A DNA stretch of 64,000 nucleotides from Ylistrum balloti (GCF_031769215.1 NW_026781872.1:434001-498000), one strand, 5' to 3'. Positions 5,071 through 20,431 are shown, numbered from the stretch's first letter. Notes: a model not told the origin generated them from the sequence alone. Numbers and translations: made by a program.

Positions 5071-5729
5071 TCATTGGTTGGTAACATCAGCTCTACATCC
5101 CCACTATATGGTGTTAACATGTAGTTGTCCAATTAATAACCAAGGTATTTCCGATATCACGATTTTCTTGTCAGATGTCGGCAGCTGACAGACAAACTCC
5201 TGACATTAGAATTCGAGACATGCAGATTGGAGAAGGTCACGGAAGTTTTATGATCGTCATAATGCTCTCAGCGGGAATTATTCTTATTCCTTTTGCGATA
5301 TGATGTCCGTTGTGACTGGTGCTGTTCAGTTAGCGGGAAAACCTGATATTTTTCTCCTTTTACGTTTTCAGCAGTCTCCGTGTAAATATTTCTTTTATTA
5401 ATATTTTGCCCTAGTTTTATTTTGTTTGGATAATCAGGTTGTCAGTATTGTCTTTGTTGTTTTCGTAGCCCTAACCAAGAGGAGACCATTATTGCTACCA
5501 CTGCTTACTACTGAAGGACGCTCAAAACTGTGAACCTGTTACCGTCTGAACTAAAACTGGTTGCTACTAATGCTAAACATTATATTATGATACATGTACC
5601 GAAACAACACACATTAAAATTCCACCAAATAGTGTATCCAAATTACGAGTTTGTTTGATGAAACATAAAAATCAATTAAAATTACCTTCTTAAGATCAAT
5701 ATTGAGAAAATGTCGCTTTTCTTTCACAG

Positions 5730-8700
5730 GTACAGTCATTTGTCGTATCAGCCCCTAACGACACGATTACAGAATCCAGGACGTGGTTGGTCCGAGGAGT
5801 ATTCTATCAGCGCAACTAATTTCGATCCTGTTCAGGTGAGATAATAACGTTTCGTCAATAAATATCAATAGTTTTCGTGTAAGTATGTACGTACAACAAT
5901 CCTACAATCTTGCTTGTATAGGTTTCAAGCTTGTCCAAGAAATATTGTATAACTTCAGTTCATTCCAATAGTGGTACGGATCTGATTATACAAACATGGG
6001 TTTAGATCTTAAAAAACACCATGTAAACGATAACAGATACAATATTTTCATATCCACATTTCTTCAAACTTTCTCCTAAATTACTTCTTCCTTGTTATTA
6101 CAAAATCTGTTTAGTGTGATTACGAGGAAACAGTGTAAATGACCTCGCCATATCTGGATAGGAACTTCTTAACAGAGGTCATAAGATAACATGACTTCGG
6201 AGATTGGCATGAAAGTAAAGCTGGTCTATAAATCGTACTTGATATAATTAGTAAAATAAATCATTTTTAAATGTTTAAGATAGTTACGTTTTCGAAGAAG
6301 TCTTTTTTCATCTTTTTTTTTTTTTTTTTTATTTTTTACTTATTTTACACTTATATTGAAAATTGTCATAGTTAGCGATTTGATCACCATACGAAATAGA
6401 TTTGGGTCGCCGTTACCCCTTCCGAGATTTTGTTCTCTGACCTTCCTTAGTCTCCGTCAATGTGATCACTTTTATGACACTAAATGACGTTACTATTAGG
6501 ATTCTGAATATCTATCTACATAATAACCCTAGGTATCTTGATATTTTCATTTCTATCCTATATGTGCTGCTCTTGTGCTTCGTGTTCAATTCTGTGTGTC
6601 CGTCTTGATCATGAAAACCTGGCTGTTGCGTGACGAAAATATCATGTCCAGTAGTTATATGATGTTATTTAACGTATTTGAAATGACTTATTTTACAGCT
6701 AATCCAACTGGACTCACTGCGTCTCACTACTGGCAGCACTTTAGTACATCGGCATTACACCCTTGAAGACTTCAAAACTACACCAATATCTCCCAACTTT
6801 TTAGAGAGAGTAGAGAAGGATTTTGCGACCATCAGAGAGGCCGGTTTTATGGTTGTCCTGAGATTTAGTTACAAGAAAGGACTGATGGGAGAGGTAGGAT
6901 TTCTCAGTATGTGTGAAAGCGGAATATTCGCCACATGCAATCTGGGCTGCTTGTATTATAGGTGATTTACGTGATTATGTGACTGAGGTGTTTGATAAAC
7001 AATCAGTGCACCAATCCGTCGTATTTGTAGTATTTTAAGCTAACGATACAACGCTAGATACTAGTTTTAAGTTGATTAATCATATTCAAAAAGAAATTCA
7101 GACAAATCAGAATAGGTTTTTACGATGCTTGAATTTTTGTATCATTCGATATATGCTTTGCAACAATAAATACACGATTAATTACCATCTATTTAATTGT
7201 AAATGAGTAAACGATCGCTTTGCTTGTGTGTTTAATGATCAATAAAATACAAACGCAACACCAAACATAAACTGTGTCAAGCATATTAGGAAAAGTTAAC
7301 AAAGTAAGGTGAATATTAGTATGTTTTACAGTTTCTACAATAACATTATTTCACCACAGTCTCTCAGTGGTGTTAAAGCTGACAATGCAAATTAAGAAAG
7401 TTAATTTTGAAATAAAGAATGCTTTTGTCTCCCAAATGCTTAGAAGTTCCCTTTGATATCTTCCGGTCAGTGTATCTAAGGCAGTGGTCGACAGTGTAGT
7501 ACAAGCCTTGCTTGGAAACGAGTACGGGCATCCCGGGGTACGGGCATCCCGGGGTATAGCCGTCTTTAAACCTGTCAAACCGGTTTACATTTCAATATTG
7601 ATCGCCCGAAGTTAAACTCACCTGTATATATTATATGAGTACAATTACCCGTGACCCAAAAAGAGTGCACTCAACTGAGAACCTGAGGACTTTGAAGTTG
7701 CGTGAAAATGATCAGTACTTCCCAGCTATACACAATTAAAAATATATATATATATAATTCAACTGATAACACAACAAACTTCCAGTAGTCCATCCCAACA
7801 CACGTGCATATGCAACACATTAAAGTAACGACCAATTTTACTATGTCACTATAGTGCTTGAAAAATGCTGTATAACGACTATTTTTTATTTATGTTTCAC
7901 AAGCTTGGTCGTGTAAATGTTTTACTAGTAAAACAAAGGGGTGGTGATCATGACCTCGAAGAAAATAAATGGAAACAGGAAAACTTAAAACGCAGAAATT
8001 TATGTCTGTACCATGGAAAAACAAGATAGGGTTTGCCGTAGTTATTCATTTATTGTATTTGCATGTTTTCCTCCAAAACACACGACTAAAGATGTGCAAT
8101 TTGTAACTTTATTGATGTTAAATTCGGTTATTTTGCTAATGTTATTTATGTCTGAACAACATATATAGATACGTGTTCAATGTCGAATTCCATGTCGAAA
8201 TCCAACTTCATCGGTCATTCGGAAGACAAAATGAAAGCGAGTAAATGTTCTTATGCATTGTACCAATTAGTTGCGTTGCGCCGTCACTGAATAATGATAA
8301 CTGTTCGCAGGCCTGATATACACTAGGATACCTGTACACGTTTCCAAGCAAGACTGGGACTACAATGACCGTAAGCTATCGTTAGTTTAGGGTCTCGGAA
8401 GTATTCTATGAAAATATAGAAGGATTTTTTTAAACTTGAATTGTCAGCTTTAGTAGTATTTCTGACCATCCCCAGGGACAATATGGCGACGCCACCAAGG
8501 ATATCATGAAAGTTCACATTTCCCAGCTGAAGCCGCTATTCTGGAACTATCGTGGTATCATATTAGCCGTTCAAGCAGGCTTTATCGGAACATGGGGTAA
8601 GCCGCTTTTTAAGCCTAAGATTTTTTTTTTCAACTGAAAATTATGCATACCATTCGGTGAATATGCAATTTCCTGTGCTTTCATGTTTCATCAATCGTCG

Positions 8701-11700
8701 TGCGCCTTCCGCAATCTTCCTTCAAACTTCTTCCAAACAAATTTGGTATGACGCATAATGGGAAGAAGGCAATTATTTGCTAAATAAATTAAGTAAATTT
8801 TATCATGGTTAACAAGTGGACGGGATAGAAAAGGAGAAATTCAAAAATGTGTGTGTGAATATGGAAATTATCTACATGTTTGCTATAAAAAGGTACTCAA
8901 TAACCATGAAAATGGGTAATTAGATAATATTTTCATTAAACCTCTTCTCTGAAGATAAAAGGATGAGCACCAAAGGAAGAATAATTACATTTGGTCTGAA
9001 ATCTCTCTGGTTAAGGGCAGTGGTGTTTGTAAGAAATATCCTCTTCCTTGGAAATGTTTGAAAACAGGTCTTATTGGAAATTTGCTAGTTGTTTGATTAT
9101 CAAAGTGATAATATTTTCCCTACCTGAGTGTCTGCTGTCAGATGACTGAACTATCGGTAAGGTGATACCACATTCGGTCATATTTTACTGACAACTGACT
9201 TCAATCGTCCTGGTAGATTGTACATCTATGTTGTTCGCCCTGCTATACTACCATTAGGCTGTCACAACCTATTTTCAATCTCTCGATAAACCAGAGTTGC
9301 CAAAACACATTTTCAGAAAATGGGTTACTTTAGCCATGCAAGCAGTCATCGCCCGTCAGCATCAGATTGTACAATATCTTAAACTATCTTTCTTTTTTAC
9401 GTTCAGGCGAATGGTATTATACAGATCATTTCGGATACCCTCCACCTTTGAACTCTGACAACTACAAAGATCGTCGTGAAATTGTTGAAAGCTTACTTGA
9501 TGCTGTTCCAGATGATCTGTAATTATTGTTTTTTTTATATGTGTATAACCGTTATTTGTGTACAAATACATGCCCAATGCTATCTGCTATAAACTTTTAA
9601 CGCTTTTTATACTTCGTCTATCAAGGCTATCTTTAATTATGATTTTACCGTGCTTAATTAAATTTTGTAAACGAGAAAATACATCTACTGGACAAAACAA
9701 GTGAAGGATCATAAAATGTTACGATGAGAAGATGATATATTGCCTTTATTTGTATCCCCAACTTTCTTCAAAGTGGTGGCAATAACGGATAGAAGGGCAT
9801 CCCGATGGTATGTTATACCGTACTGACAAACTTCGATGGTGTTAAAAAGATTTATGCTGGATTCTGCTGAAATTCTTGGGTTTGATTTAAGTTATTCTCA
9901 AGCTGAGATTTCGTAATATTTTTGACATTTTTGCATAGTTTAACCAAGGGAACCATGCAAAGACATGTACGTGATATGAAAGAGGCACGGGAGTCACTCT
10001 GATTGTGGTCTAACAATTATTCAAATCTCTGTTTTTGTGAATACGTTACGAGATATTGATACAATATGTACTTGTTATCTGCTCTTGTTAGCAACGAACA
10101 CAAATAAATCTGTATGTTTCTTGCCTTTATTGATTTCAATATATGTAAACTGTAAAATGTTTTCTTTAGGTTTTTTTAACATCGAAGTTGCTTTCATTTC
10201 ATGATCTTCATCTGATTTGTTCAGATTGTTTTCATATCTTTCAAAACAAAACCCATTTCATATTTTGCTTATTTACATTTCATTCATTTAAACGTATCAC
10301 TTAATTAAATTGTATGAATCATCAGAACGTGAAATCTGAAATCGTATGTCAGTTTGTTTTTTTCTCTTCCAATAAAGTCAAATTCAGCTCCGAGCACCAG
10401 TATTTAAACGTGAGATGTATAGCTATCAACCTACTTCCATCGTTGACCTGTTGCAATACAACAGAAAGCGAAACGTGAAATCACGTATAGGTGAGTAGAA
10501 AAAAGACATTAGATAGTACTATGTATTATTGTATAACTAAACAAGTTGTTTCAAGCGAAATCCCTAAATGTTATTTAGCATGGACGCTGTGTTTCATGAA
10601 TAGTATGATTGTAACAAGAAATGTAATTGCAGTGCTATCAACATACTGAAGACTGTCGATAAGCTTAATCTTAATATGTATAAAACAGCAGTACGTGTAG
10701 GTATGTTTTTTATCTAGAGTTGGATATCAATCGAACATGTGGATGACATGTTTAAGGTTTCATTTTAAAGGTCACCATAACGACTGCTTCCTGGCCGATT
10801 CCACAGACCGCGGCACATACTCCAATTTCAACGTTGAGTTTAACTACATGCGAGAGGACACGACACATGTTATCATGGGCGGCGAGACATGCGCATTAGA
10901 TAATGAGAGAGGCAGGCAAGACGGTCATGACTTAAATGACACATAATATTAAAAATGTTCTTGATAAATTACTATTATTAATTTGACCAACGTAGTTATT
11001 GCCTTTTACATGGAGGAATAAGCAATAGGTTGTATTGAAGCTGTTCTGTTCAATTATTCAAACGATCAAATAATGTCTTCATTACGATGACGGCATATAT
11101 GTAATCAATCATATCCCCAGGGTATATATCATTGTACAGACAGAACATATATGATACATAATGATAATTATCGGTATTTTTTTATTTTCCAGAACATTAC
11201 ACTGATCTTAGAATATCCCCAAATTTTCGGCTTTTTCGGAGTTTTGTTGCAACACACATTTACTGAATTACAGTTTGAAAGAAATGATTGTTCTCCCTTA
11301 CATTGGTAATTGGTAAGCAAATGCATAATGATCATTGCAGACATGTTTGCTCAAATGCTGAACAAGAACTTGAGGCACTCCACTTCACCTTCCTATCTCA
11401 ATCCTACCATAAGGCAGTCCTTTCAAACTGGACAACAGACGGTTGTTATGATTTATTCGCAGCTAAGCTGGGATACACAATGGCTCTTGTAGAGGTAAGA
11501 CTCATACAAACGACTAGAATTGAATTTTAAAAAAGCTTGTATTGATTGAGTTTCAGGTTTTGATACACCTTTTAGTTATTGGAAACACAACTCTATTTTA
11601 TCTTGTATCACTCTTCCCTATTTTTAAAGTATTTATCAGTAAAATGCTTTGAGACGTATTCACATTACCTGTGTATGTGTGTGTTCCCATTCATCTTGCA

Positions 11701-14700
11701 TCAAGAATTTTGCTTTTTATAGTGTCTTTAACATGTTTCTTTTTTGTCGTTACATATGAATGTTCTAGTGTGATTTATCTTTCATAATTTACTGTTTCTG
11801 TGTAATAGCAAAACTATTTAATTATTTTGTGCTTTTAAGGTTTCTTATTAAGCCTCAAGTTGATGGTAACTTGCCGTAAACAAAAGAATATATTCTGTTT
11901 ATAAAATTTGTTGACATATTTACATTTAAAGGCTTCTCCAACACAATGAAAACATCACACAGAGCATTATTTGATCGTCATTAAGTACGGTGAAATAAAA
12001 TATTTTAAGTATTTTAATTTTTTCGTTGCGACATAAATTTCGATATTTGCATTGTCATGGCATTTGCCAACAGAGGTTATTACATCCTCTCTCCAAGATT
12101 TACATGACAGATAGGATGTCTGCAGATAAGGTGTCCAGTAGCTTTATCCTGGTGTGCAAACGTTATTACATTTCCTGTTTACAAAAAGAACTAGGTTTGT
12201 TTGATAACGAAAGAAACCCCACCTTTACATCATGCAATCTTTTAAAAAGTAGAAACACTAGCTAATCATGCTTCGGGAGTTTGTTTATACATTATATGGA
12301 AACGAACCTCATCCATTTATACTGGATCCATAAATCTCACAAGAATCCATATAAACAAGGTTTTATCGCTGGCCCGTCTAGCTGTTCAACCAAACCTTTG
12401 TCAGAACTACCAATCACCATTCTAAGTACTATCAAGTCTGTATTACAGTGTCATTGGGATTTTGTTTACTCAAGGAAAGGAATTGATAATATGTGGATTT
12501 TGAGGAATTCCAAAGAAGTTTTTGAACAATCTTCATCACCCTATTCCAAATACATTTATGGTATTCGAGCATTTGATTGTTTCACCCAGTACACCACCAT
12601 ACCCTATTCTAAACTTAAGGACAAAATCATTAGTTATCTTGTTATATCCTTCTCCACTAAAGGAGATTGACGGTAAAATATATAGTTGAGAACTATACTG
12701 AAGTGTATTTCGTAAAACAAATACGTCAAAATCAAACAAAAATAAATACACGAAGAACGAAATCATAAAAAAATGATCGAGATTTTGTTTGAAACCATCC
12801 TCGTCGAATGTGGTGGTAAAACCTATTGGGAACTAACTGCTCCTTTTTGTAGACCAACTTGTTTTTGTTTTCATACGAGGCTGAAGTTATTGAAGAGCAT
12901 ATAAAATATGTCACAAAGAGTTTAATTACTCTTTCAAATCAATTGATGACGTCTTGACTTTAAATAACAAGAAACGTATTGACCAAAGCTTTATGATAAA
13001 TGTAATGATTTCAATTTCCCTAATGTGAATTGCCCATTTCTGGATAGTAACTCCCTTCATTCCCAACCTGTGGTATTAACAAGTCATAGTTGATTCAATA
13101 TTGAAGTGACTGTTCCCATTTTCGCGATGGTCGTGCAAGAAGTCGACAACTGACGGACAAACACGTAACACCGGGTTTCAAAAGACGTATTCGTTATAGT
13201 GATATCATTGGGAAACATGCTATTTCTTTGTGTGATTTGAAGTATAACGTCTATGTTGATCGTTACTTTGCCAGCTGGTTCTATTGTTGTATATCTTGCT
13301 CTCATTTGAGAACGTGACATTACTTACATGGAACGACCAAGGTTTGTATTGCTGGTTTCGTCGATGAAGCAGATGAAGCTTACTCTTCAGGAACACAGGG
13401 TCTTATTATCCTAGTACTTTTGCAGGAATATCGGTGCAAATAATTATTTTGTTCATTTTTGTGACCCAGTGGCATGGAATTTGAGTTTGGATTATGATTA
13501 GGTTGACATGTTGGTATTTTCATTATCTTTTTTACATAATACATAATGTTTTTATATCAGATGATTCCAACTACACGCATGAACCTGTCTTTATCCTTTT
13601 CAGAGTGTTCTGCCCGATACTGTTGTTCGTGGAGGAGAGTTTTCTTATTACATATTATTGAGAAACAATGGATATGCGGCACCTGCCAAAGATATGAACG
13701 TGTACCTTGTTCTCATGTCGTAAGTTTTTTTATATCTGCATCATTTAGTTTGGTTGTTAGCTTACTGCCCTATTTGTTCTAGTATAATAAACATTCGTTT
13801 GTTATTTGCCTGTACATTTTCAATGTTCGATAATATTTACCTTAATGAGCCTATGATGTAATAAAGATGATTCGTTTTAAGGTCCACAAACGGTATCTAC
13901 AAGGTTCCCCTAGAAACTAACACTCGATTGTGGATACCAAACAAAGACATTGTTCTCCGAGGAAGCGTCGAGGTTCCCCGCTCAGTAACCCCCGCCTCTT
14001 ACCAGGTACGAACAAACTATCGCTTCTGATTGACTTCCAATTCATTTTGTATATAAAAAGTCTACATCTGTCTATTCAAGACGGATTTCTATTTATTTCT
14101 TCATTATTTTATCTTCATTTAAAATGTGTAGATTTCCGTCTTTCTTTTATTATTTCAATATGAAAATATGAAAAAAATTGTCAAATATTATATCACCTTC
14201 TACCATTTTGACATGTTTAGCAAAATGCAATTTTCAATTCCTTGTAGTTGTATCCGTCTTAAATACCGGCATTCTATGGGCTGATGTACCCAGCAAACAA
14301 CAAACAAGACAAGTATTGTGAAATTTTTATTGTAGATGTGGATGGCTATTGGTGACAAACAACTAACTGAGGAGTCCGACTACTACGTCCTCTTGGCCAA
14401 CAATATGGTTCCATCTCCAGACATGGGTCTTAACAATCTGACTCATCCCATCACCGTATGTATGACAAAGAATTCAGATTATGGTGTGTTTGATAGGCTC
14501 GATCGTTGAATGGAACGCATATGTTTTTGTACTATTTATAATGAAGTATATTTACGAAATGAAACATTGAATACACACAAGTATACGAGGAAATCTTCGC
14601 CGAGAGGTTTGCCCTCTTCGCAGCAAATTTAGAACTCCTCATTTTTGTCCAGTATTGAACTTACCCTGTAAAGTAAATACACTTTAAAGTCACATATAAT

Positions 14701-17700
14701 CCCATTATATTTTAGCGTATCTCACTAGAGACAGCAAACTAGCGTAGTCATTTTCACAAAATATCTTATGAACAGAAAATATGAATTGAATCAGATATTT
14801 AATTGCTTTGATGCGTTTTCACAGACACAACCCAAGGCATTCGTCCTCCTAAAATTATATTTGTGAGAATGCTAAACCCCAGATTAAGAAAAGCATAGTT
14901 ATTCTCTTATTTGCAATATCTCCTATAGGTGGTAGAGGGAACGCCAGTGGTAACTTCAAATTGTCCATCCTTCGAGCCATGGAATCCACCACAGTTCGCT
15001 CGTCACCCTAGAATCTTGGGTAAGTTACGATGAATGGAACCCCAGAAATTGTATTGTTAACAAAATATCTATTATTGTTTTTATATCTTGTATGGATTTA
15101 TTACAATTGTCTATTGACGCAAACGATTATTACACGTTCTGGCCACGAATATGCTTCAAGAGCGAAAAGATGTTCAGGTTTAGATAAAAGTTTAGATAAG
15201 GGAAAAGCGGCAATAACTCAGATTAAAACAATACAATCTTATTATTCATGAAATGGTGTCAGCTTGGTGTGACAATGATATAGAGTAATTTTATTAACCG
15301 TGCTAAAGAATCAATACAGAGTACATTCTGACACGGAACAATATCAAACATGCCTTATTTAAACATATACCTGATCTATCAAGTGTCCTTAGATTGCAAA
15401 TAAACTTTCCACTATGACATGTGCGAATTTTTTCATATGGTTGAATAAATTTCAAGTTATTTGAATATTGCAAAAATCTGTGTCTTTATTTTGTTTGCAA
15501 TAATCGACAACGGTTATATCTTAATTCAAATGTCTTAATATTGAAAATGAAGGATTAAATCGTAATGGAATAGCAGCAGTTTAACAGCTGTAAAGTTGTA
15601 AAAAGCTGATGAGATAAATCCATCCTTAATCGGTGCTTAAACATTATTACATGACCATTTTTATATCACTTCCCTTATCAGTCCGAGAGTCCTAAGTAGG
15701 GATGTTATATCAAAATGGTCATATAATCATCTTTTTATCAAATATTCGTTATCTTTAAAATAAACAAACCACACAAATCAATTTTTTCTTAACTCAACAT
15801 TACAACAGCGATGACACACTATTTACTGATATTCATAGATACATATACTGAGCTGTTTACGTTCGCAGACGACAGATGCGTTTATCACTCATAAGGGAAA
15901 CCAATCCGTAAACGGCACCATTCCGAAATTTAAGTTGGGATCTAAAAAACTTTTATAGGAAACAATTTTAAAAAACGTATTTCTTCCAGGCCAATAATAT
16001 TTATGTTCAAATCAGACAGCTATAAGAGGAAGCGGCAAAATACACAAATTTGAGAGTGGGTGTGATATCACCCGGATAGGTATCAACTTGTGGGAATGCA
16101 CATTTATCACGCATTGTGTTAAAAGTGTTAAAACTATATACGATAATGTTTCAGTATCGCATATAGTTGATAAAATATCACTTACATATGATATCTTTTC
16201 ACTGTTATCAGGTAATGATATTCTTTGATGTGACATTACATGCTCTCTCATTTTTGGGAATCTACAGAAGTAATATAATAGTGATAGTTTTCTGTTCATG
16301 TTTAGTTTTGTTGTGCGGTTCTGAATTTTTTGCAGTTGTGCCTTCATCTAGTACATACTGTTAAGGAAAAAACTATGAAACTTCATTCCAGAAAGCAACG
16401 CTTGTTTGAAAACGAGAGTATTAAATCACGATTTCGAAGACTCAACCTCGTGGTCAGGACTTTGGAACGGTTTCCACTACCGTCAAGACGCCGCGCAAGC
16501 TTACAGTGGAAGCGGGTATATCGAGGTGGTAGACACACCTGAGGGAGGTGGTTCCTACCAAGCATTTACCTTCTTTGACAAACCGACAGTTAAGTACGTA
16601 TACTTGATATAACATCATTTGTTTTATTCTTCTTGCACTGTATCATGGATCTTAGTCAAATTCTTCCTTTTCATATTTTGTCCTAGTTTCATTAAATCCG
16701 TGTTTGAATAAATATTTCATCGATTTTTTTAAAAAAAATTTCCTGGTCAATCCCCTTTTTATTCATACTCCATAGAGTGTTGTTTGGGGGATTTTTTGTT
16801 TGATTGTTTGGTTTGGTTTTATTTTTGTATTTTGGTCTTTGTTCGACCTTTCAGTCGTTGAAAACAGAACAACACAATCACATCTGGGATGCTGAAACCG
16901 TGATATCGAAATAAAGGGTCATTTGAAATGAAACAACTTTATGCTTATACAAAAGACCCAATTTTTAAGGATACAAATATATCACCACTTTCTCCATACA
17001 ACATTGTTTCCGAGCAGATACTAGAATACCGTATTAGAAATCAGCCCGGTATGAGTAATTGTAGAAAATAAATTCCAAATAAAATAAGAACGTGAGGTCA
17101 CTAATGTTTCAAAATTTAAATCTTCATTTCATGGTTTAGCAGTGACAAAGAGAATTTTTAAAAAATCAATAAGAAGTCAGATTTAGATACTGTAAAGCCA
17201 AACAAGGAATTCATAGTAATCATACAACTATTTCATTCTCTGAGGACTCATTGGTGACGCTAAAGACCTTAATCCGGGGGGAACTGCGAAAAATAAAAGA
17301 AAATGCTATGGCTCCAACAATCAAGTTGATCATTTTAGTAGACGAAATGTCGAGTCTTGTCGGTCAATTTTAGAGTATTTCCAATACTGTGTTGTTGATC
17401 ACTTCAATAGGTTAGTTTTTTATTGTAAACCTAGCACTTGAACATTTCATTAATACTGTGTTTTACTTGTCCACAAATGTTGCAATAAGAAAAATAATGA
17501 CATATTGATTGCATTATAAGTTGGGATCGGACTTGAATGTCTTTATATTATGTTTGAATTGTATGTTTTCATTATCAACGAGTATTAGAAATCCCCTGCG
17601 TGAATGTTGGAAATGTTGGCTGGTTAAATCATTATTAGAAATGTGTTAGAAATATTATTGCGTAAAATATTGGAAATGATAGATGTTTTATTGGCATCGT

Positions 17701-19134
17701 ATATGATTCAATATTCGTTAAAATATTACATAACATTTGATTCTATCTTTGAAATGAAATTTCGAATATGTACTAAAATCCACATGTTTATTCGACTAGT
17801 ATCAATTACCTTTATTTGCAGTCTAACAAGAATGGCAATAAAAGCCTGGGGAAAACATAGCGGATCTGTAGGCATGGGCAGTACCAATTTCAGTTTATAC
17901 TGTGACGTCACGGTAAGCGCGTTTTACAACTTTACAACACGAGTCATTGTCTGCTTTCAAATAAATAATCATAATTGTGCTTCCATTTATAAAGAACCTC
18001 GGATTTTCGTGATTTTATTTAATCCACGATGATAAAATTTGACACATCGAAAAGAATAACAATAATCTACTAAGTGTATGTAAACTATATTGATGATAAT
18101 GAGTTTGTAATCCGCCATCAAAAACGTTCATTTGAAGTGATTTCTGTCATAATGTCTGACATTTAAAATATCAATCAAAAAGATCATATACCTCATTTTT
18201 GTCATTGGTTTGATAATGTAAATGTCATTAATTTATCATTCTATTGTAATGTAATAATGTGTAAAACGTTGTAAGTTAACTTCGTCTTTACAGTTACAAG
18301 ACGAATCTGGAACATATGGATTAAACAGGCCATTCTTAGGTGGACAACAGGGAACTACCTGGAACAGTGTTATAGTTACAATTGATCAACCTAAGGTGAT
18401 TATAAACTGTTAAAATACACAGTGATTTCAGATACAAGTTGTAACGCGAATGCTCAATGCTGAGGAAACGGTTATACAATTGGTCATATATATAGGTTAG
18501 ATGTACAAACCCGAAATAATATTATATATATATATTGTGGGAAGAGAGTTTAAGTTTAGTAATGGTTTTGTTAGGTTGGAAGAATTTTTACCGAATTTTC
18601 TTTTATCTTATTTTTATTTTATTTGGTTTTATAGAGGAAAGACGGGATTAAGTTATAAAACAACTGGTGTCATAACCCCGGAACAAGACCTAAATAGATG
18701 GCGTATTGGCAAAGCAAAATTCTAGTCATTATTTTATTGGGATGAACGAATGTTGACTTAATGTTTAAATCAGTAATTGTTTCGGGTTCAAATTTGCATA
18801 AATCAGTGGGAACAAGTATTGGAACAGGGATGAGTCTTTGATCAAACAAGTGGGCCAACACAGGTTATATGGCCTGTCTCTCCTTTTGTTTTCTATAACC
18901 TACACATATTACATGCTGAAAAGGATAGTCGTTACAGAATGTATGACATAATGCATTAAGTTTTTGTTTTAGATTGGATTTTTCTTACTGATATTTTTTC
19001 CATTACAGGGAATCCGGGCAGTAACATGTTACCTTCTATACAAGGGATATAATGGAGGTTCAGCATACTTTGACAAGGTGGACGTTTGGCTTCTCTCTGG
19101 AACCACCGGGTTCGAAGAATGTCAATACACATAA
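5730..19134 (+). CDS. Multi-exon DUF4874 + DUF4832 domain protein with C-terminal CBM4/9-like domain (putative glycoside hydrolase); 5' end not located
   Basis: Exons: 5730-5835, 6699-6893, 8476-8596, 9407-9518, 10378-10490, 10771-10915, 11341-11494, 13604-13719, 13882-14005, 14336-14455, 14929-15019, 16392-16593, 17822-17912, 18294-18395, 19009-19134 (TAA). All junctions are AG/GT except one GC donor, phases are compatible, and the joined frame is open for about 638 codons. Motifs recognised from DUF4874/DUF4832 proteins: NPGRGW, TLVHRHYTLEDFKTTPIS..DFATIREAGFMVVLRFSY, HISQLKPL..AVQAGFIGTWGEWYYT, QIQLRAP, GHHNDCFLA..DRGTY..GGETC, LHFTFLSQSYHKAVLSNW..GC..KLGY, LRNNGYAAP, TRLWIP, VLLAN..GLNNL. 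The family call is from recalled motifs, not a database search. Confidence 0.85.
10914..10921 (+). other. Non-canonical GC 5' splice site (GC-AG intron 10916-11340)
   Basis: CAG|GCAAGA. No GT donor is available in the needed phase 2 before the in-frame stop at 10944-10946, and this junction joins GGETCALDNERG to RHVCSNAEQEL in frame. Confidence 0.75.
12030..13405 (+). mobile_element. Decayed Penelope-like retroelement RT region inside intron 7 of the DUF4874/DUF4832 gene
   Basis: Collinear RT motifs with frameshifts and stops: ADKVSSSFILVCKRYY..LQKELG; LYWIHKSHKNPYKQGFIAGPSSCSTKPLS; NMWILRNSK; IRAFDCFTQYTTIPYSKLK; a PIGTNC-like/SYEAE segment near 12830-12890; FKSIDDVLTLNN (catalytic DD near 12945); YDKCNDFNFPNVNCPFLDS. 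The shared 3' motif follows at 13310-13403. Confidence 0.88.
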
Positions 19135-20431
19135 ACACAAATAATGTTTTGATTCTATTAAAACCTGAAGATAAAATCTATAGAATATTACATTTGCCAT
19201 CCAAATACGGAGCAATGAAACATCTTAATTCTGAAATTCTTGATGTCACGCCCGCATCATTTTGAGTATGTCTATAAGATACTATTTTTGTACATTAATT
19301 CTTATGTTTTCAGATCACATAATGTTATCAGGTTGACTGTAAGATCATTATACCTATACATATGTTGTTTAAATTAAACAGAAACACAAATTATAGATGG
19401 TTTTCAAGCAGTTTTCATTATTTGTATGGATAAACAAACCTGCTCCAACACTCTAAAACGTTGTTGGCATTCCCTTCATATGATATGTCTATAAAAAAGG
19501 TGGATAGTGTCTGCAACGAGATCGTCTCTTTAATTATTTACATTGTTTCAATCCGTCATTCATATGATAACCCTTACTTTGTTCAATAAGAAAACTTTAT
19601 ACCCTTATTTTCTATAGAAGTATTCATGCAAAAACGGGTTCAATATATGTTTTAATTGTTCAAACAAATGGCAAATATGTTGATTAAAAACGACAATGTA
19701 CAGTTGTAGCGTACTCTAAAATATGTAACGTAAATATGACGTCACTTAAAAAAACTTGCGTCGGTAGAGAAACCGAAGAATTATACAGGTTGGTCATGGA
19801 GTATAAATTCATGGCATATTCATGTTCATTTCAATCAATACCACGTAAATTTGTATTGTAATAAATAAAGGTCTGTTTTACCATTTCAAAGCGTTATTTC
19901 TTTTATGAAGTAAAACAGTTTAGATCTTTTATCACGATGTTTAACCCTATATAATTCATTTTGGCATTAGCTTATACTGTGATAATTATATGTCGGTCGC
20001 TCGTAATTTACGTAATATTTTAGTACTGTAGGTCACAAGTTATACTATACAAACACCACAGTGCACTACATGGTTCGGTAGAAATGTAATGCAATCAGTC
20101 TCAGGATGTTTCCTATTATTATTTCATAACTAAAATACTTCATACATTAGAATTTAAGGAGACATGTTACCTATTTTGTTTTTCTAATTCTGCAAAATGT
20201 AAACGAAAGCAGCTCACATATTAGCAAAAGACTGGAACATATTGTCAGTGTTTTTTATATACCATAGTCTAGCACCTGATCGATTGTGCGATGTTTTTTC
20301 CCTTATGTTAAAAGCCCTGTCTACAGCATATTATGAGTAATTAATCTTTTTTGTACCTATTACAAACATGTATTGACTCAACCTTTTACTTTCACACAGG
20401 AAAATATTTATATTTGCATTAATATATAGAT

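What the first reader, a model, noticed from the sequence alone, without database searches (positions are those of the whole stretch)
5730..19134. Intron-rich animal gene encoding a bacterial-type DUF4874/DUF4832 putative glycoside hydrolase
Seen: the ORF track shows only scattered fragments of this gene, but 15 exons splice into one open frame of about 638 aa with all DUF4874 and DUF4832 signature blocks in order. Known: these are uncharacterised domains mostly encountered in bacteria, often paired and predicted to form a glycoside-hydrolase-like TIM barrel plus a beta-sandwich. Inference: this is a fully domesticated (14 introns) carbohydrate-active enzyme of unknown substrate, acquired by ancient horizontal transfer or patchily retained. 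It could act on algal or microbial polysaccharides in digestion or immunity. It is the best candidate for undescribed biochemistry in the window.
Basis: partly seen in the sequence, partly recalled or inferred. Interest (0 to 1): 0.8.

Follow-up and report, generated by a model that had tools for sequence, protein, structure and literature searches.

The report
Ancient animal DUF4874/DUF4832 glycoside hydrolase gene
A scallop gene of 17 exons encodes an intact, strongly conserved, probably secreted enzyme of a mostly bacterial sugar-cutting family; shared introns with abalone, tubeworm and amphioxus show animals have carried it since before the protostome-deuterostome split, and its substrate is still untested.

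Summary
Fifteen GT/GC-AG exons (window 5730-19134, + strand) splice into 638 aa. These are identical to residues 50-687 of RefSeq 'uncharacterized protein LOC132543518 [Ylistrum balloti]'. Two more 5' exons, including the signal peptide, lie 11 and 55 kb left of the window.

The protein matches Pfam DUF4874 (137 bits) and DUF4832 (162 bits). It models as a (beta/alpha)8 barrel, a beta-sandwich, a linker and a CBM16/61/22/4-like jelly roll. It keeps both family-invariant glutamates, E191 and E303.

It is under strong purifying selection: dN/dS is 0.06 against Pecten maximus, and 1 (synonymous) of 43 variants in a second individual falls in an exon.

All 27 animal homologues (molluscs, siboglinid annelids, amphioxus) form one clade (99/96). 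Scallop, abalone, tubeworm and amphioxus share 9 of 10 catalytic-region intron positions. The intron-bearing gene therefore predates the bilaterian split, and any bacterial transfer is older than that.

The substrate is unknown. My best guess (about 0.35) is a Pel-like alpha-1,4-GalNAc/GalN microbial exopolysaccharide. The only tested family member disperses Pel aggregates, and relatives adjoin pel loci in Flavobacteriia and a Nitrosomonas MAG.

This is a new member of a known kind. An amphioxus homologue was already published as a bacterial transfer.

The parts
5730..5835 (+). Exon 3 of 17, the first exon inside the window. It enters in phase 2. It encodes YSHLSYQPLTTRLQNPGRGW..., where DUF4874 starts (N64 codon at 5773-5775).
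   Evidence: Acceptor ...tttcacag|G at 5729/5730 and donor GTGAGA at 5836. Identical to P0105.
6699..6893 (+). Exon 4: DUF4874 profile positions 21-78, barrel strands beta2-beta3.
   Evidence: Pfam 44.9 bits on this open stretch alone. Junctions.
8476..8596 (+). Exon 5: DUF4874 positions 77-122. It ends inside the G190 codon of the GFIGTWG|EW motif (phase 1).
   Evidence: This intron position is shared by scallop, abalone, tubeworm and amphioxus.
9407..9518 (+). Exon 6. It opens with the family-invariant E191 (codon GAA at 9409-9411), the candidate acid/base residue in the loop after beta4.
   Evidence: E191 is invariant in 84 family members. Codon position.
10378..10490 (+). Exon 7: end of DUF4874 (P234) and start of DUF4832 (R263).
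10771..10915 (+). Exon 8. It carries the GHHNDCF motif (H267-N268-D269 at 10776-10784) and GGETC with the invariant E303 (GAG at 10884-10886, end of beta7), the candidate nucleophile. It is followed by the only GC-AG intron.
   Evidence: Pfam 43.7 bits, invariance, donor GCAAGA, strand assignment.
11341..11494 (+). Exon 9: DUF4832 positions 52-116, strand beta8 and the last barrel helices.
   Evidence: Pfam 42 bits. Junctions.
13604..14455 (+). Exons 10-12 (13604-13719, 13882-14005, 14336-14455): the beta-sandwich that packs on the barrel (about residues 360-486). DUF4832 ends at N466.
14929..15019 (+). Exon 13: linker carrying the motif C-P-x-F-x-P-W-N-P-P-x-x-x-R-H-P-R-I-L, conserved in molluscs. 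The model confidence is low here.
   Evidence: Alignments A2 and A3. pLDDT is below 50 for residues 525-557.
16392..19134 (+). Exons 14-17 (16392-16593, 17822-17912, 18294-18395, 19009-19134 with stop TAA): the C-terminal beta-jelly-roll, a carbohydrate-binding-module-like domain. An AATAAA signal lies at 19157.
   Evidence: Model of residues 495-687 has pLDDT 74. Foldseek's best matches are CBM16, CBM61, CBM22 and CBM4, target TM 0.62-0.69. All 4 introns are shared with Haliotis. dN/dS is 0.036.

Best explanation
The gene is functional and vertically inherited in Ylistrum balloti (LOC132543518). It encodes a probably secreted, modular glycoside hydrolase of the DUF4874/DUF4832 family.

Shown here: the intact 17-exon reading frame; both Pfam domains; a confident (beta/alpha)8 barrel plus beta-sandwich model; retention of the family's invariant E191 (loop after beta4) and E303 (end of beta7); strong purifying selection; and a single animal clade with shared introns, so the gene existed with its introns before protostomes and deuterostomes split.

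Inferred: the two glutamates carry out acid/base catalysis of glycosidic bond cleavage in a cleft on the barrel. The C-terminal CBM-like jelly roll, added in the mollusc lineage, tethers the enzyme to a polymeric glycan. The short hydrophobic N-terminus (MLLGGVCLLTTQVES) is a signal peptide.

My most likely substrate is a Pel- or galactosaminogalactan-like, partly deacetylated alpha-1,4-GalNAc/GalN exopolysaccharide of microbial biofilms. On that reading the enzyme would break up microbial matrix in feeding or in surface and symbiont defence. I give the substrate assignment about 0.35. I give the general statement 'active secreted polysaccharide hydrolase of pre-bilaterian age' about 0.85.
For: Gene model and identity to P0105.
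Pfam scores: DUF4874 137 bits and DUF4832 161.6 bits, against cut-offs near 30.
Structure: mean pLDDT 84, above 90 over most of the barrel. The barrel (residues 65-360) aligns with GH5 and beta-amylase structures at Z 14-15, rmsd about 4 A, about 10% identity.
Conserved residues: E191, E303, G184, G187, W189, R232 and others are invariant in 84 sequences, and H267-N268-D269 are at least 90% conserved. The scallop keeps 80 of 88 columns that are at least 85% conserved.
Selection: pN 0.094 against pS 0.67 versus Pecten maximus, omega about 0.06. In an independent DNA run, 1 of 43 differences falls in exons and it is synonymous (binomial P 0.004).
Single animal clade: UFBoot 99 / SH-aLRT 96, found in 100% of 200 bootstrap trees, with topology amphioxus,(tubeworms,(molluscs)).
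Introns: 9 of 10 catalytic-region introns, plus the phase-2 intron before exon 5730, are shared in place and phase across scallop, Haliotis, Ridgeia and Branchiostoma.
Substrate lead, published: recombinant SIR_1591 (TIM barrel plus DUF4832, encoded in the Streptococcus intermedius pel operon) disperses Pel aggregates as well as PelA hydrolase does (PMC12345266). DUF4832 genes are contiguous with pelDEADAFG in streptococci and clostridia (10.1101/768473).
Substrate lead, found here: the flavobacterial proteins that are among the closest bacterial hits (35% identity) lie next to a pel-like operon of PelF-like DUF3492+GT4, PelG-like, GH114 and DUF2194. This holds in at least 14 of 80 fetched loci. 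A Nitrosomonas MAG has the gene beside two GH114 genes, PelG (511 bits) and PelF.
Against: No enzyme assay exists for any animal member. No RNA run of this species was served, so transcription is not shown here.
The pel linkage in Flavobacteriia could be inherited synteny, because an unrelated upstream gene (DUF294) is conserved as well.
The one myxobacterial and one Marinoscillum locus I scanned against Pfam showed no pel genes. tblastn with the five flavobacterial pel-block proteins found none in the Kribbella, Nonomuraea, Streptomyces or Chloroflexi loci either. A rumen Ruminococcus member carries a dockerin in a cellulosome (PMC7480376). Substrates may therefore differ within the family.
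I could not place SIR_1591 in the tree because I had no reference for its sequence.
The scallop differs from the family consensus at K135M, D176G, N332S and R359T. Some of these may line the cleft.
E191 sits nine residues after strand beta4, not at its very end as in classic clan GH-A. The mechanism (retaining or inverting) is open.
Confidence: 0.4

Rival explanations
1. It is a digestive hydrolase for a dietary algal, plant or detrital polysaccharide other than Pel (for example a galactan, mannan, xylan or glucan), secreted in the gut or digestive gland of filter feeders and grazers.
For: The holders are grazing and filter-feeding molluscs and amphioxus. The nearest structural matches of the C-terminal module are CBM16, CBM61 and CBM22, which bind beta-glucan or mannan, beta-1,4-galactan and xylan. 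One family member is a cellulosomal protein in a rumen consortium. The barrel's best structural neighbours are GH5 beta-glycanases.
Against: Adult siboglinid tubeworms, which keep two to three copies, have no gut (established knowledge). The amphioxus homologue was reported as highest in notochord rather than gut (PMC13350694). No tested family member acts on such substrates. Fold similarity at 10% identity says nothing about specificity.
Confidence: 0.25
2. It acts on one of the animal's own glycans (mucus, extracellular matrix or shell-matrix glycan) in tissue remodelling rather than on microbial material.
For: It has been retained under strong constraint for more than 500 million years in unrelated body plans. 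Notochord expression is reported in amphioxus. Its neighbours in other genomes are glycan enzymes: GT29 in Branchiostoma and GH18 in Ridgeia.
Against: It was not seen among the 120 best hits in vertebrates, arthropods, oysters or mussels, which is odd for a core housekeeping role. No animal polymer of the Pel type is known. The neighbouring genes are not conserved between phyla.
Confidence: 0.12
3. It is a recent or lineage-specific bacterial transfer into scallops, or bacterial contamination of the assembly.
For: The family is overwhelmingly bacterial: at least 3403 proteins at E <= 1e-10 and 588 confirmed loci in bacterial genomes. Identity to Flavobacterium proteins (35%) equals that to other animal phyla. 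A 2026 paper lists the amphioxus homologue as a bacterial transfer.
Against: The gene has sixteen spliceosomal introns. Orthologues with the same 17-exon plan occur in Pecten and in three further scallop genera. A 6963-base contig from an independent DNA run spans exons and introns. The animal clade has 99/96 support. Nine of ten introns are shared with amphioxus.
Confidence: 0.02
4. It is a non-catalytic lectin-like or decaying gene.
For: A paralogue in the same genome has lost both glutamates, so the fold can survive without catalysis.
Against: The window gene keeps E191, E303 and HHND. It has no stop or frameshift, and omega is 0.06.
Confidence: 0.04

Closest known systems
Streptococcus intermedius SIR_1591 (TIM barrel + DUF4832, encoded in the pel operon; mBio 2025, PMC12345266)
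   Same: It carries the same Pfam DUF4832 signature and the same two-part plan of a (beta/alpha)8 barrel followed by a beta-strand domain. The authors report the same structural neighbours (beta-amylase, beta-galactosidase). It is extracellular.
   Different: It is bacterial, membrane-anchored, 468 aa, and has no CBM-like tail. Its N-terminal half may be of the GH42-like type seen in Bacillota clusters rather than DUF4874. I had no reference for its sequence and could not align it. Its Pel-dispersing activity is shown, whereas the scallop protein's activity is not.
Amphioxus 'DUF4832P-like' (Commun Biol 2026, PMC13350694); the paper's gene accession is not in the passages I read. The Branchiostoma proteins used here are P0113, P0227, P0228, P0230, P0231 (LOC109484404), P0235 and P0237.
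   Same: The Branchiostoma proteins belong to the same animal clade. They have the same domains, and P0227 shares 9 of 10 catalytic-region introns with the scallop gene.
   Different: The amphioxus proteins lack the CBM-like tail and carry a Cys-rich N-terminal stretch. The paper treats the gene as a transfer from bacteria into amphioxus. The shared introns and clade found here place the origin before the protostome-deuterostome split.
Flavobacterium T9SS-sorted DUF4874/DUF4832 proteins (e.g. L020:7941-9563, F. cauense)
   Same: The catalytic region is 33-37% identical, all invariant residues are shared, and the proteins are secreted.
   Different: They have no introns. A T9SS sorting domain replaces the CBM-like tail. 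They lie next to a pel-like operon.
Clan GH-A glycoside hydrolases (GH5, GH42) and GH14 beta-amylase
   Same: Same (beta/alpha)8 barrel (Z 14-15), with acidic residues after beta4 and at the end of beta7.
   Different: There is no sequence-level relation: no PDB hit by sequence or by profile and no weak Pfam hit. Rmsd is about 4 A. E191 lies in a loop nine residues beyond beta4.
PelA hydrolase domain (GH166), Ega3 (GH114), Sph3 (GH135)
   Same: A possible shared substrate class (alpha-1,4-GalNAc/GalN polymers) and TIM-barrel catalytic domains. GH114 genes are neighbours of the bacterial relatives.
   Different: These are different families, and no GH114 HMM match to the scallop protein was found. 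The resemblance is functional, by inference only.

Membership tests
Pfam DUF4874 (PF16173) | HMM score above the gathering cut-off (30.1 bits) | tested here: met
   137 bits, residues 64-234, profile positions 1-157 of 159. Exon-level hits.
Pfam DUF4832 (PF16116) | HMM score above the gathering cut-off (29.2 bits) | tested here: met
   161.6 bits, residues 263-466, profile positions 1-216 of 216. Exon-level hits.
DUF4874/DUF4832 enzymes | The two domains in this order, forming one (beta/alpha)8 barrel plus a C-terminal beta-sandwich | tested here: met
   AF2 model: eight strand-helix units over residues 68-355, then a sandwich over 360-486, with pLDDT above 90.
DUF4874/DUF4832 enzymes | Family-invariant residues (GxWGEW glutamate, GGETC glutamate, HHND) | tested here: met
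   E191 and E303 are invariant, and H267, N268 and D269 are at least 90% conserved, in 84 sequences; all are present in the scallop.
DUF4874/DUF4832 enzymes | Glycoside hydrolase activity | not testable with these tools
   Only SIR_1591 has been assayed (PMC12345266).
Clan GH-A (4/7 superfamily: GH5, GH42 ...) | Acid/base Glu at the end of beta4 and nucleophile Glu at the end of beta7, with detectable homology to a member family | tested here: inconclusive
   E303 ends beta7 (strand 300-304), but E191 lies nine residues after beta4 (strand 178-182). GH5 structures score Z 14-15. There is no sequence or profile hit to any solved chain and no weak Pfam hit.
GH114 / GH166 Pel and GAG hydrolases | Match to the family model | tested here: not met
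   Only DUF4874 and DUF4832 are reported for P0105 at E <= 0.1. GH114 matches the neighbouring bacterial genes, not this family.
Pel-active hydrolases (functional class) | Cleavage of alpha-1,4-GalNAc/GalN polymer, or a gene linked to a pel locus | not testable with these tools
   Linkage is seen for bacterial relatives in Bacteroidota and a Nitrosomonas MAG and is published for Bacillota. An animal gene has no operon context.
CBM_4_9 (PF02018) and related jelly-roll CBMs | HMM score above the cut-off (25.9 bits) | tested here: not met
   No hit for the scallop tails. The abalone and Gigantopelta orthologues score 12.5 and 14.3 bits. The fold is alike: CBM16, CBM61, CBM22 and CBM4 at E 4e-8 to 1e-5, target TM 0.62-0.69.
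Horizontally acquired animal gene | The animal clade nested inside the donor group on a rooted tree | tested here: inconclusive
   The animals are one side of a branch (99/96), but the tree is unrooted. The bacterial range is far wider.

The most novel reading that the evidence does not exclude
Molluscs, siboglinid annelids and amphioxus share a secreted enzyme, held since the bilaterian ancestor, that cuts Pel- or galactosaminogalactan-type cationic biofilm matrix. It would be an animal 'biofilm dispersin' used in feeding, surface defence or symbiont control. In molluscs it gained a glycan-binding module, and in scallops it spawned a catalytically dead, possibly lectin-like paralogue.
Probability: 0.25. 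Interest if true: 0.75.

Novelty: new member of a known kind. Interest (0 to 1): 0.5.

Why it matters
The DUF4874/DUF4832 family has thousands of bacterial members, no solved structure detectable by sequence, and only one assayed protein. The animal branch is intact, strongly constrained and old. That makes it a good target for finding what the family does and why a few marine lineages kept it.

The shared introns also correct the published picture of the amphioxus gene as an amphioxus-specific transfer. If the Pel-type substrate holds, this would be an animal-encoded enzyme against a widespread bacterial biofilm polymer. That would interest host-microbe biologists, and such enzymes could be useful anti-biofilm reagents.

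Tried and rejected
RNA evidence. Two index searches, one with the 5.9 kb stretch and one with a 202-base exon, found only one run. Laying it on the stretch showed it is DNA of another individual, with one contig spanning exons and introns. Splicing and tissue profile therefore remain untested here.

Solved structures. Neither the protein nor an 84-sequence profile hits any solved chain in the catalytic region. Only the T9SS tails of the bacterial rows match.

Whole-model Foldseek. It gave only low-TM multi-domain matches to modular GH30, GH5 and GH98 enzymes. I used the exhaustive aligner and a separate model of the tail instead.

Family scans. Pfam on the C-terminal 193 aa found nothing significant. 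NCBIfam has no model for the protein or for the unknown genes of the pel-like block. Lenient Pfam scans for weak GH5 or GH42 hits found none. Intronic open frames had no Pfam family and only trivial tandem repeats.

Rejected readings. Contamination, a pseudogene and a scallop-specific transfer are rejected; see the rival explanations.

Steps I could not do. (1) I could not measure the E191-E303 distance, because model coordinates are not readable in scripts. (2) I could not place SIR_1591 in the tree, because I had no reference for its sequence. (3) I could not retrieve the annotated protein of the C289 paralogue, because exon-sized queries cannot reach full-length proteins. (4) I could not check the cnidarian, arthropod, echinoderm and vertebrate counts in Table 2 of PMC13350694. 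No such protein was among the 120 best hits to an animal-clade profile. (5) I did not hand the spliced protein to any tool as letters; I used P0105, which is identical over all 638 residues.
Full report
WHAT IS THERE

The window is G000:C15:434001-498000 of a 648.5 Mb, 34% G+C genome. Six-frame HMM searches of the whole genome found DUF4874 and DUF4832 matches at only two loci. One is the finding's span and the other is on contig C289. Open stretches on the + strand between 5680 and 14026 match the two Pfam models piece by piece and in order.

I searched one exon (window 6702-6881) against 1.84 billion representatives. This returned a 668-aa scallop protein, P0001, 71% identical over that exon. 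P0001 aligns collinearly to 15 pieces of the window. A word search with P0001 then found P0105, 'uncharacterized protein LOC132543518 [Ylistrum balloti]', whose exons are 86-100% identical by raw tblastn.

Fixing the splice junctions gave 15 exons with 13 GT-AG introns and one GC-AG intron. Their 638-aa product is identical at 638/638 positions to P0105 residues 50-687. The contig recorded for P0105 is 637,439 bases long, the same length as C15. The window therefore lies in the Y. balloti RefSeq assembly.

THE 5' END

Exon 5730 begins in phase 2. P0105 residues 25-52 map to C15:422776-422859 and residues 1-26 to C15:379167-379244.

- The nearer exon starts right after an acceptor (…tttcag|TTTGCC) and has no ATG.
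- The farther exon holds the ATG and ends …GGTG|GTAGGT.

Pecten maximus has the same 17-exon plan, with the same phases (1, 2) and two long first introns. Orthologues start MGALCFSIVLACLFTTQVES. In Y. balloti the hydrophobic stretch is MLLGGVCLLTTQVES, counted from Met21. I infer that this is the signal peptide and that the acidic first 20 residues of the RefSeq model may not be translated. This is inference only.

THE PROTEIN

The full protein passes both Pfam cut-offs: DUF4874 137 bits over residues 64-234, and DUF4832 161.6 bits over residues 263-466. An AlphaFold2 model built on an 84-sequence alignment has mean pLDDT 84. It shows four parts:

- eight strand-helix units over residues 68-355;
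- a beta-sandwich over residues 360-486;
- a poorly ordered linker, about residues 515-557;
- a C-terminal beta domain.

No solved chain is related by sequence or by profile. An exhaustive structural comparison aligns residues 65-360 with GH5 enzymes and beta-amylases at Z 14-15, rmsd about 4 A and about 10% identity. The barrel is glycoside-hydrolase-like but has no close solved relative.

Across 84 family members, E191 (GxWGEW, loop after beta4) and E303 (GGETC, end of beta7) are invariant, and H267-N268-D269 are nearly so. The scallop keeps 80 of the 88 columns that are at least 85% conserved. It differs at K135M, D176G, V177I, N332S, R359T, G441A, L447M and I462V.

The tail (residues 495-687) has no significant Pfam hit. 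The abalone and Gigantopelta orthologues give sub-threshold CBM_4_9 hits. Modelled alone (pLDDT 74), it is a jelly roll closest to CBM16, CBM61, CBM22 and CBM4. This agrees with the scan's separate note on this module.

IS IT A LIVING GENE?

- Against P. maximus, pN is 0.094 and pS is 0.67. dS is saturated, so omega of about 0.06 is approximate. The tail is even more constrained, at 0.036.
- The only public run holding this DNA is a DNA run of another individual. One 6963-base contig spans exons and introns. Of its 32 substitutions and 11 indels over 5951 bases, only one lies in the 972 exonic bases, and it is synonymous (V412 GTT>GTC). The binomial P is 0.004.
- No RNA run was available, so transcription is not shown here.

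ORIGIN

Hits to P0001 and to an animal-clade profile include the following animals:

- four scallop genera;
- two unionid mussels;
- limpets, abalone, Gigantopelta, Littorina and Batillaria;
- the tubeworms Ridgeia and Lamellibrachia;
- three Branchiostoma species.

The rest of the 120 best hits are bacterial, mainly Flavobacteriia, actinomycetes and a myxobacterium.

A maximum-likelihood tree of 88 sequences and 479 columns (LG+C20+F+G4) puts all 26 animal proteins, plus one unlabelled Logan protein that nests with the littorinid snails, on one side of a branch. Support is UFBoot 99 / SH-aLRT 96, and the grouping appears in all 200 bootstrap trees. The order is amphioxus,(tubeworms,(molluscs)).

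As independent evidence, I mapped exact exon structures for scallop, Haliotis rufescens, Ridgeia piscesae and Branchiostoma lanceolatum. On a common alignment, 9 of the 10 introns in the catalytic region coincide in phase in all four species. Six fall in the same column and three within five columns in gapped regions. The phase-2 intron in front of exon 5730 is shared by amphioxus and abalone. All four tail introns are shared by scallop and abalone.

The gene therefore already had these introns in the common ancestor of chordates and lophotrochozoans. Scallop-specific or amphioxus-specific transfer is excluded. A still older transfer from bacteria remains plausible, because the bacterial range is vastly wider (at least 3403 proteins, 588 confirmed genomic loci). 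The tree is unrooted, however, so this is not shown.

A 2026 paper lists the amphioxus homologue among eleven transferred genes and notes homologues in other invertebrates (PMC13350694). The clade and the intron map here refine that reading.

FUNCTION

The only assayed relative is S. intermedius SIR_1591, a TIM barrel plus DUF4832 protein encoded in the pel operon. It disperses Pel-dependent aggregates as well as PelA hydrolase does (PMC12345266). DUF4832 genes are contiguous with pel genes in streptococci and clostridia (10.1101/768473).

I looked at the neighbours of the bacterial relatives fetched.

- In Flavobacterium cauense, the T9SS-sorted DUF4874/DUF4832 gene is convergent with an operon. 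The operon encodes a PelF-like DUF3492+GT4 protein, a weak but full-length PelG-like protein, GH114, an unknown 656-aa protein, and a 1290-aa DUF2194 protein. DUF2194 is the family named as a domain of Gram-positive PelA (PMC7890745).
- The same block adjoins the gene in at least 14 of the 80 fetched loci, all Bacteroidota.
- In a Nitrosomonas MAG, the gene is followed by two GH114 genes, a clear PelG (511 bits) and PelF.

With the published cases, this links the family to Pel-type loci in three phyla.

Several caveats apply.

- The flavobacterial region is syntenic as a whole.
- The one myxobacterial and one Marinoscillum locus I scanned against Pfam showed no pel genes.
- tblastn with the five flavobacterial pel-block proteins found no match in the actinomycete or Chloroflexi loci.
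- A rumen member is cellulosomal.

I therefore give about 0.35 to a Pel- or galactosaminogalactan-like substrate for the scallop enzyme. I give about 0.25 to another dietary glycan and about 0.12 to an endogenous glycan. Gutless adult tubeworms keeping several copies, and the reported notochord expression in amphioxus, argue against a purely digestive role.

VERDICT

The gene is already annotated (as uncharacterized) and its family is known, so it is a new member of a known kind. This work adds:

- the exact model;
- evidence of constraint;
- the pre-bilaterian age, from shared introns;
- the fold of the mollusc-specific tail;
- a testable substrate lead.

Noticed in passing
G000:C289:385200-390750 (L007:5208-10000 and L008:1-750), + strand: A diverged paralogue (25-48% identity per exon) keeps the phase-1 intron inside the GxWG|EW motif but has lost the catalytic residues. 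It reads GFLGRSG-C-WYEPS where E191 should be, GFFRDCLPG in place of GHHNDCFLA, and IMGGRTC in place of GGETC (E303 becomes R). The matched exons are open. It may be a non-catalytic glycan binder or a decaying copy. Its introns hold long tandem peptide-like repeats.
   Followed up: partly
L020:13495-15465 (- strand), with counterparts in 13 other Bacteroidota loci: A conserved 656-aa protein with no Pfam or NCBIfam family sits between GH114 and the DUF2194 (PelA-type) gene in the flavobacterial pel-like operon. It is an uncharacterised component of that system.
   Followed up: partly
G000:C15:379167-379242 and 422778-422859 (left of the window): The RefSeq model's first exon lies 43.5 kb before exon 2. 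It adds an acidic 20-residue N-terminus (MSVVGDKLESDDVTLRLDEY) that other scallops lack. Translation may start at Met21.
   Followed up: partly
window 10916-11340: Intron 8 of the gene has a GC donor (GCAAGA). It is the only non-GT donor among the 14 introns inside the window.
   Followed up: no
P0113 (Branchiostoma floridae LOC118421762), alignment A2 columns 60-300: This model repeats about 100 residues of the DUF4874 region (…RSEGHTLIFRYYVLDLFVHSDISASFLTNLQDDLENARVAGVKIIPRFCYT… occurs twice). It is either a tandem exon duplication or an annotation or assembly artefact.
   Followed up: no
P0002 (1147 aa, metagenome contig of 67.8 kb): A single protein carries two complete DUF4874+DUF4832 units in tandem. 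The two halves are each other's nearest relatives in the tree.
   Followed up: no
L009:10638-12920 and L010:1-1417: The homologues' neighbours are glycan enzymes: a GT29 sialyltransferase next to the Branchiostoma lanceolatum gene and a GH18 chitinase-family gene next to the Ridgeia gene. This arrangement is not conserved between phyla.
   Followed up: no
window 14929-15019: The linker exon encodes a motif conserved across molluscs (C-P-x-x-x-P-W-x-P-P-x-x-x-R/K-x-x-R-I/V-L/F). It is partly recognisable in tubeworms, although the model is disordered there. Its role is unknown.
   Followed up: no
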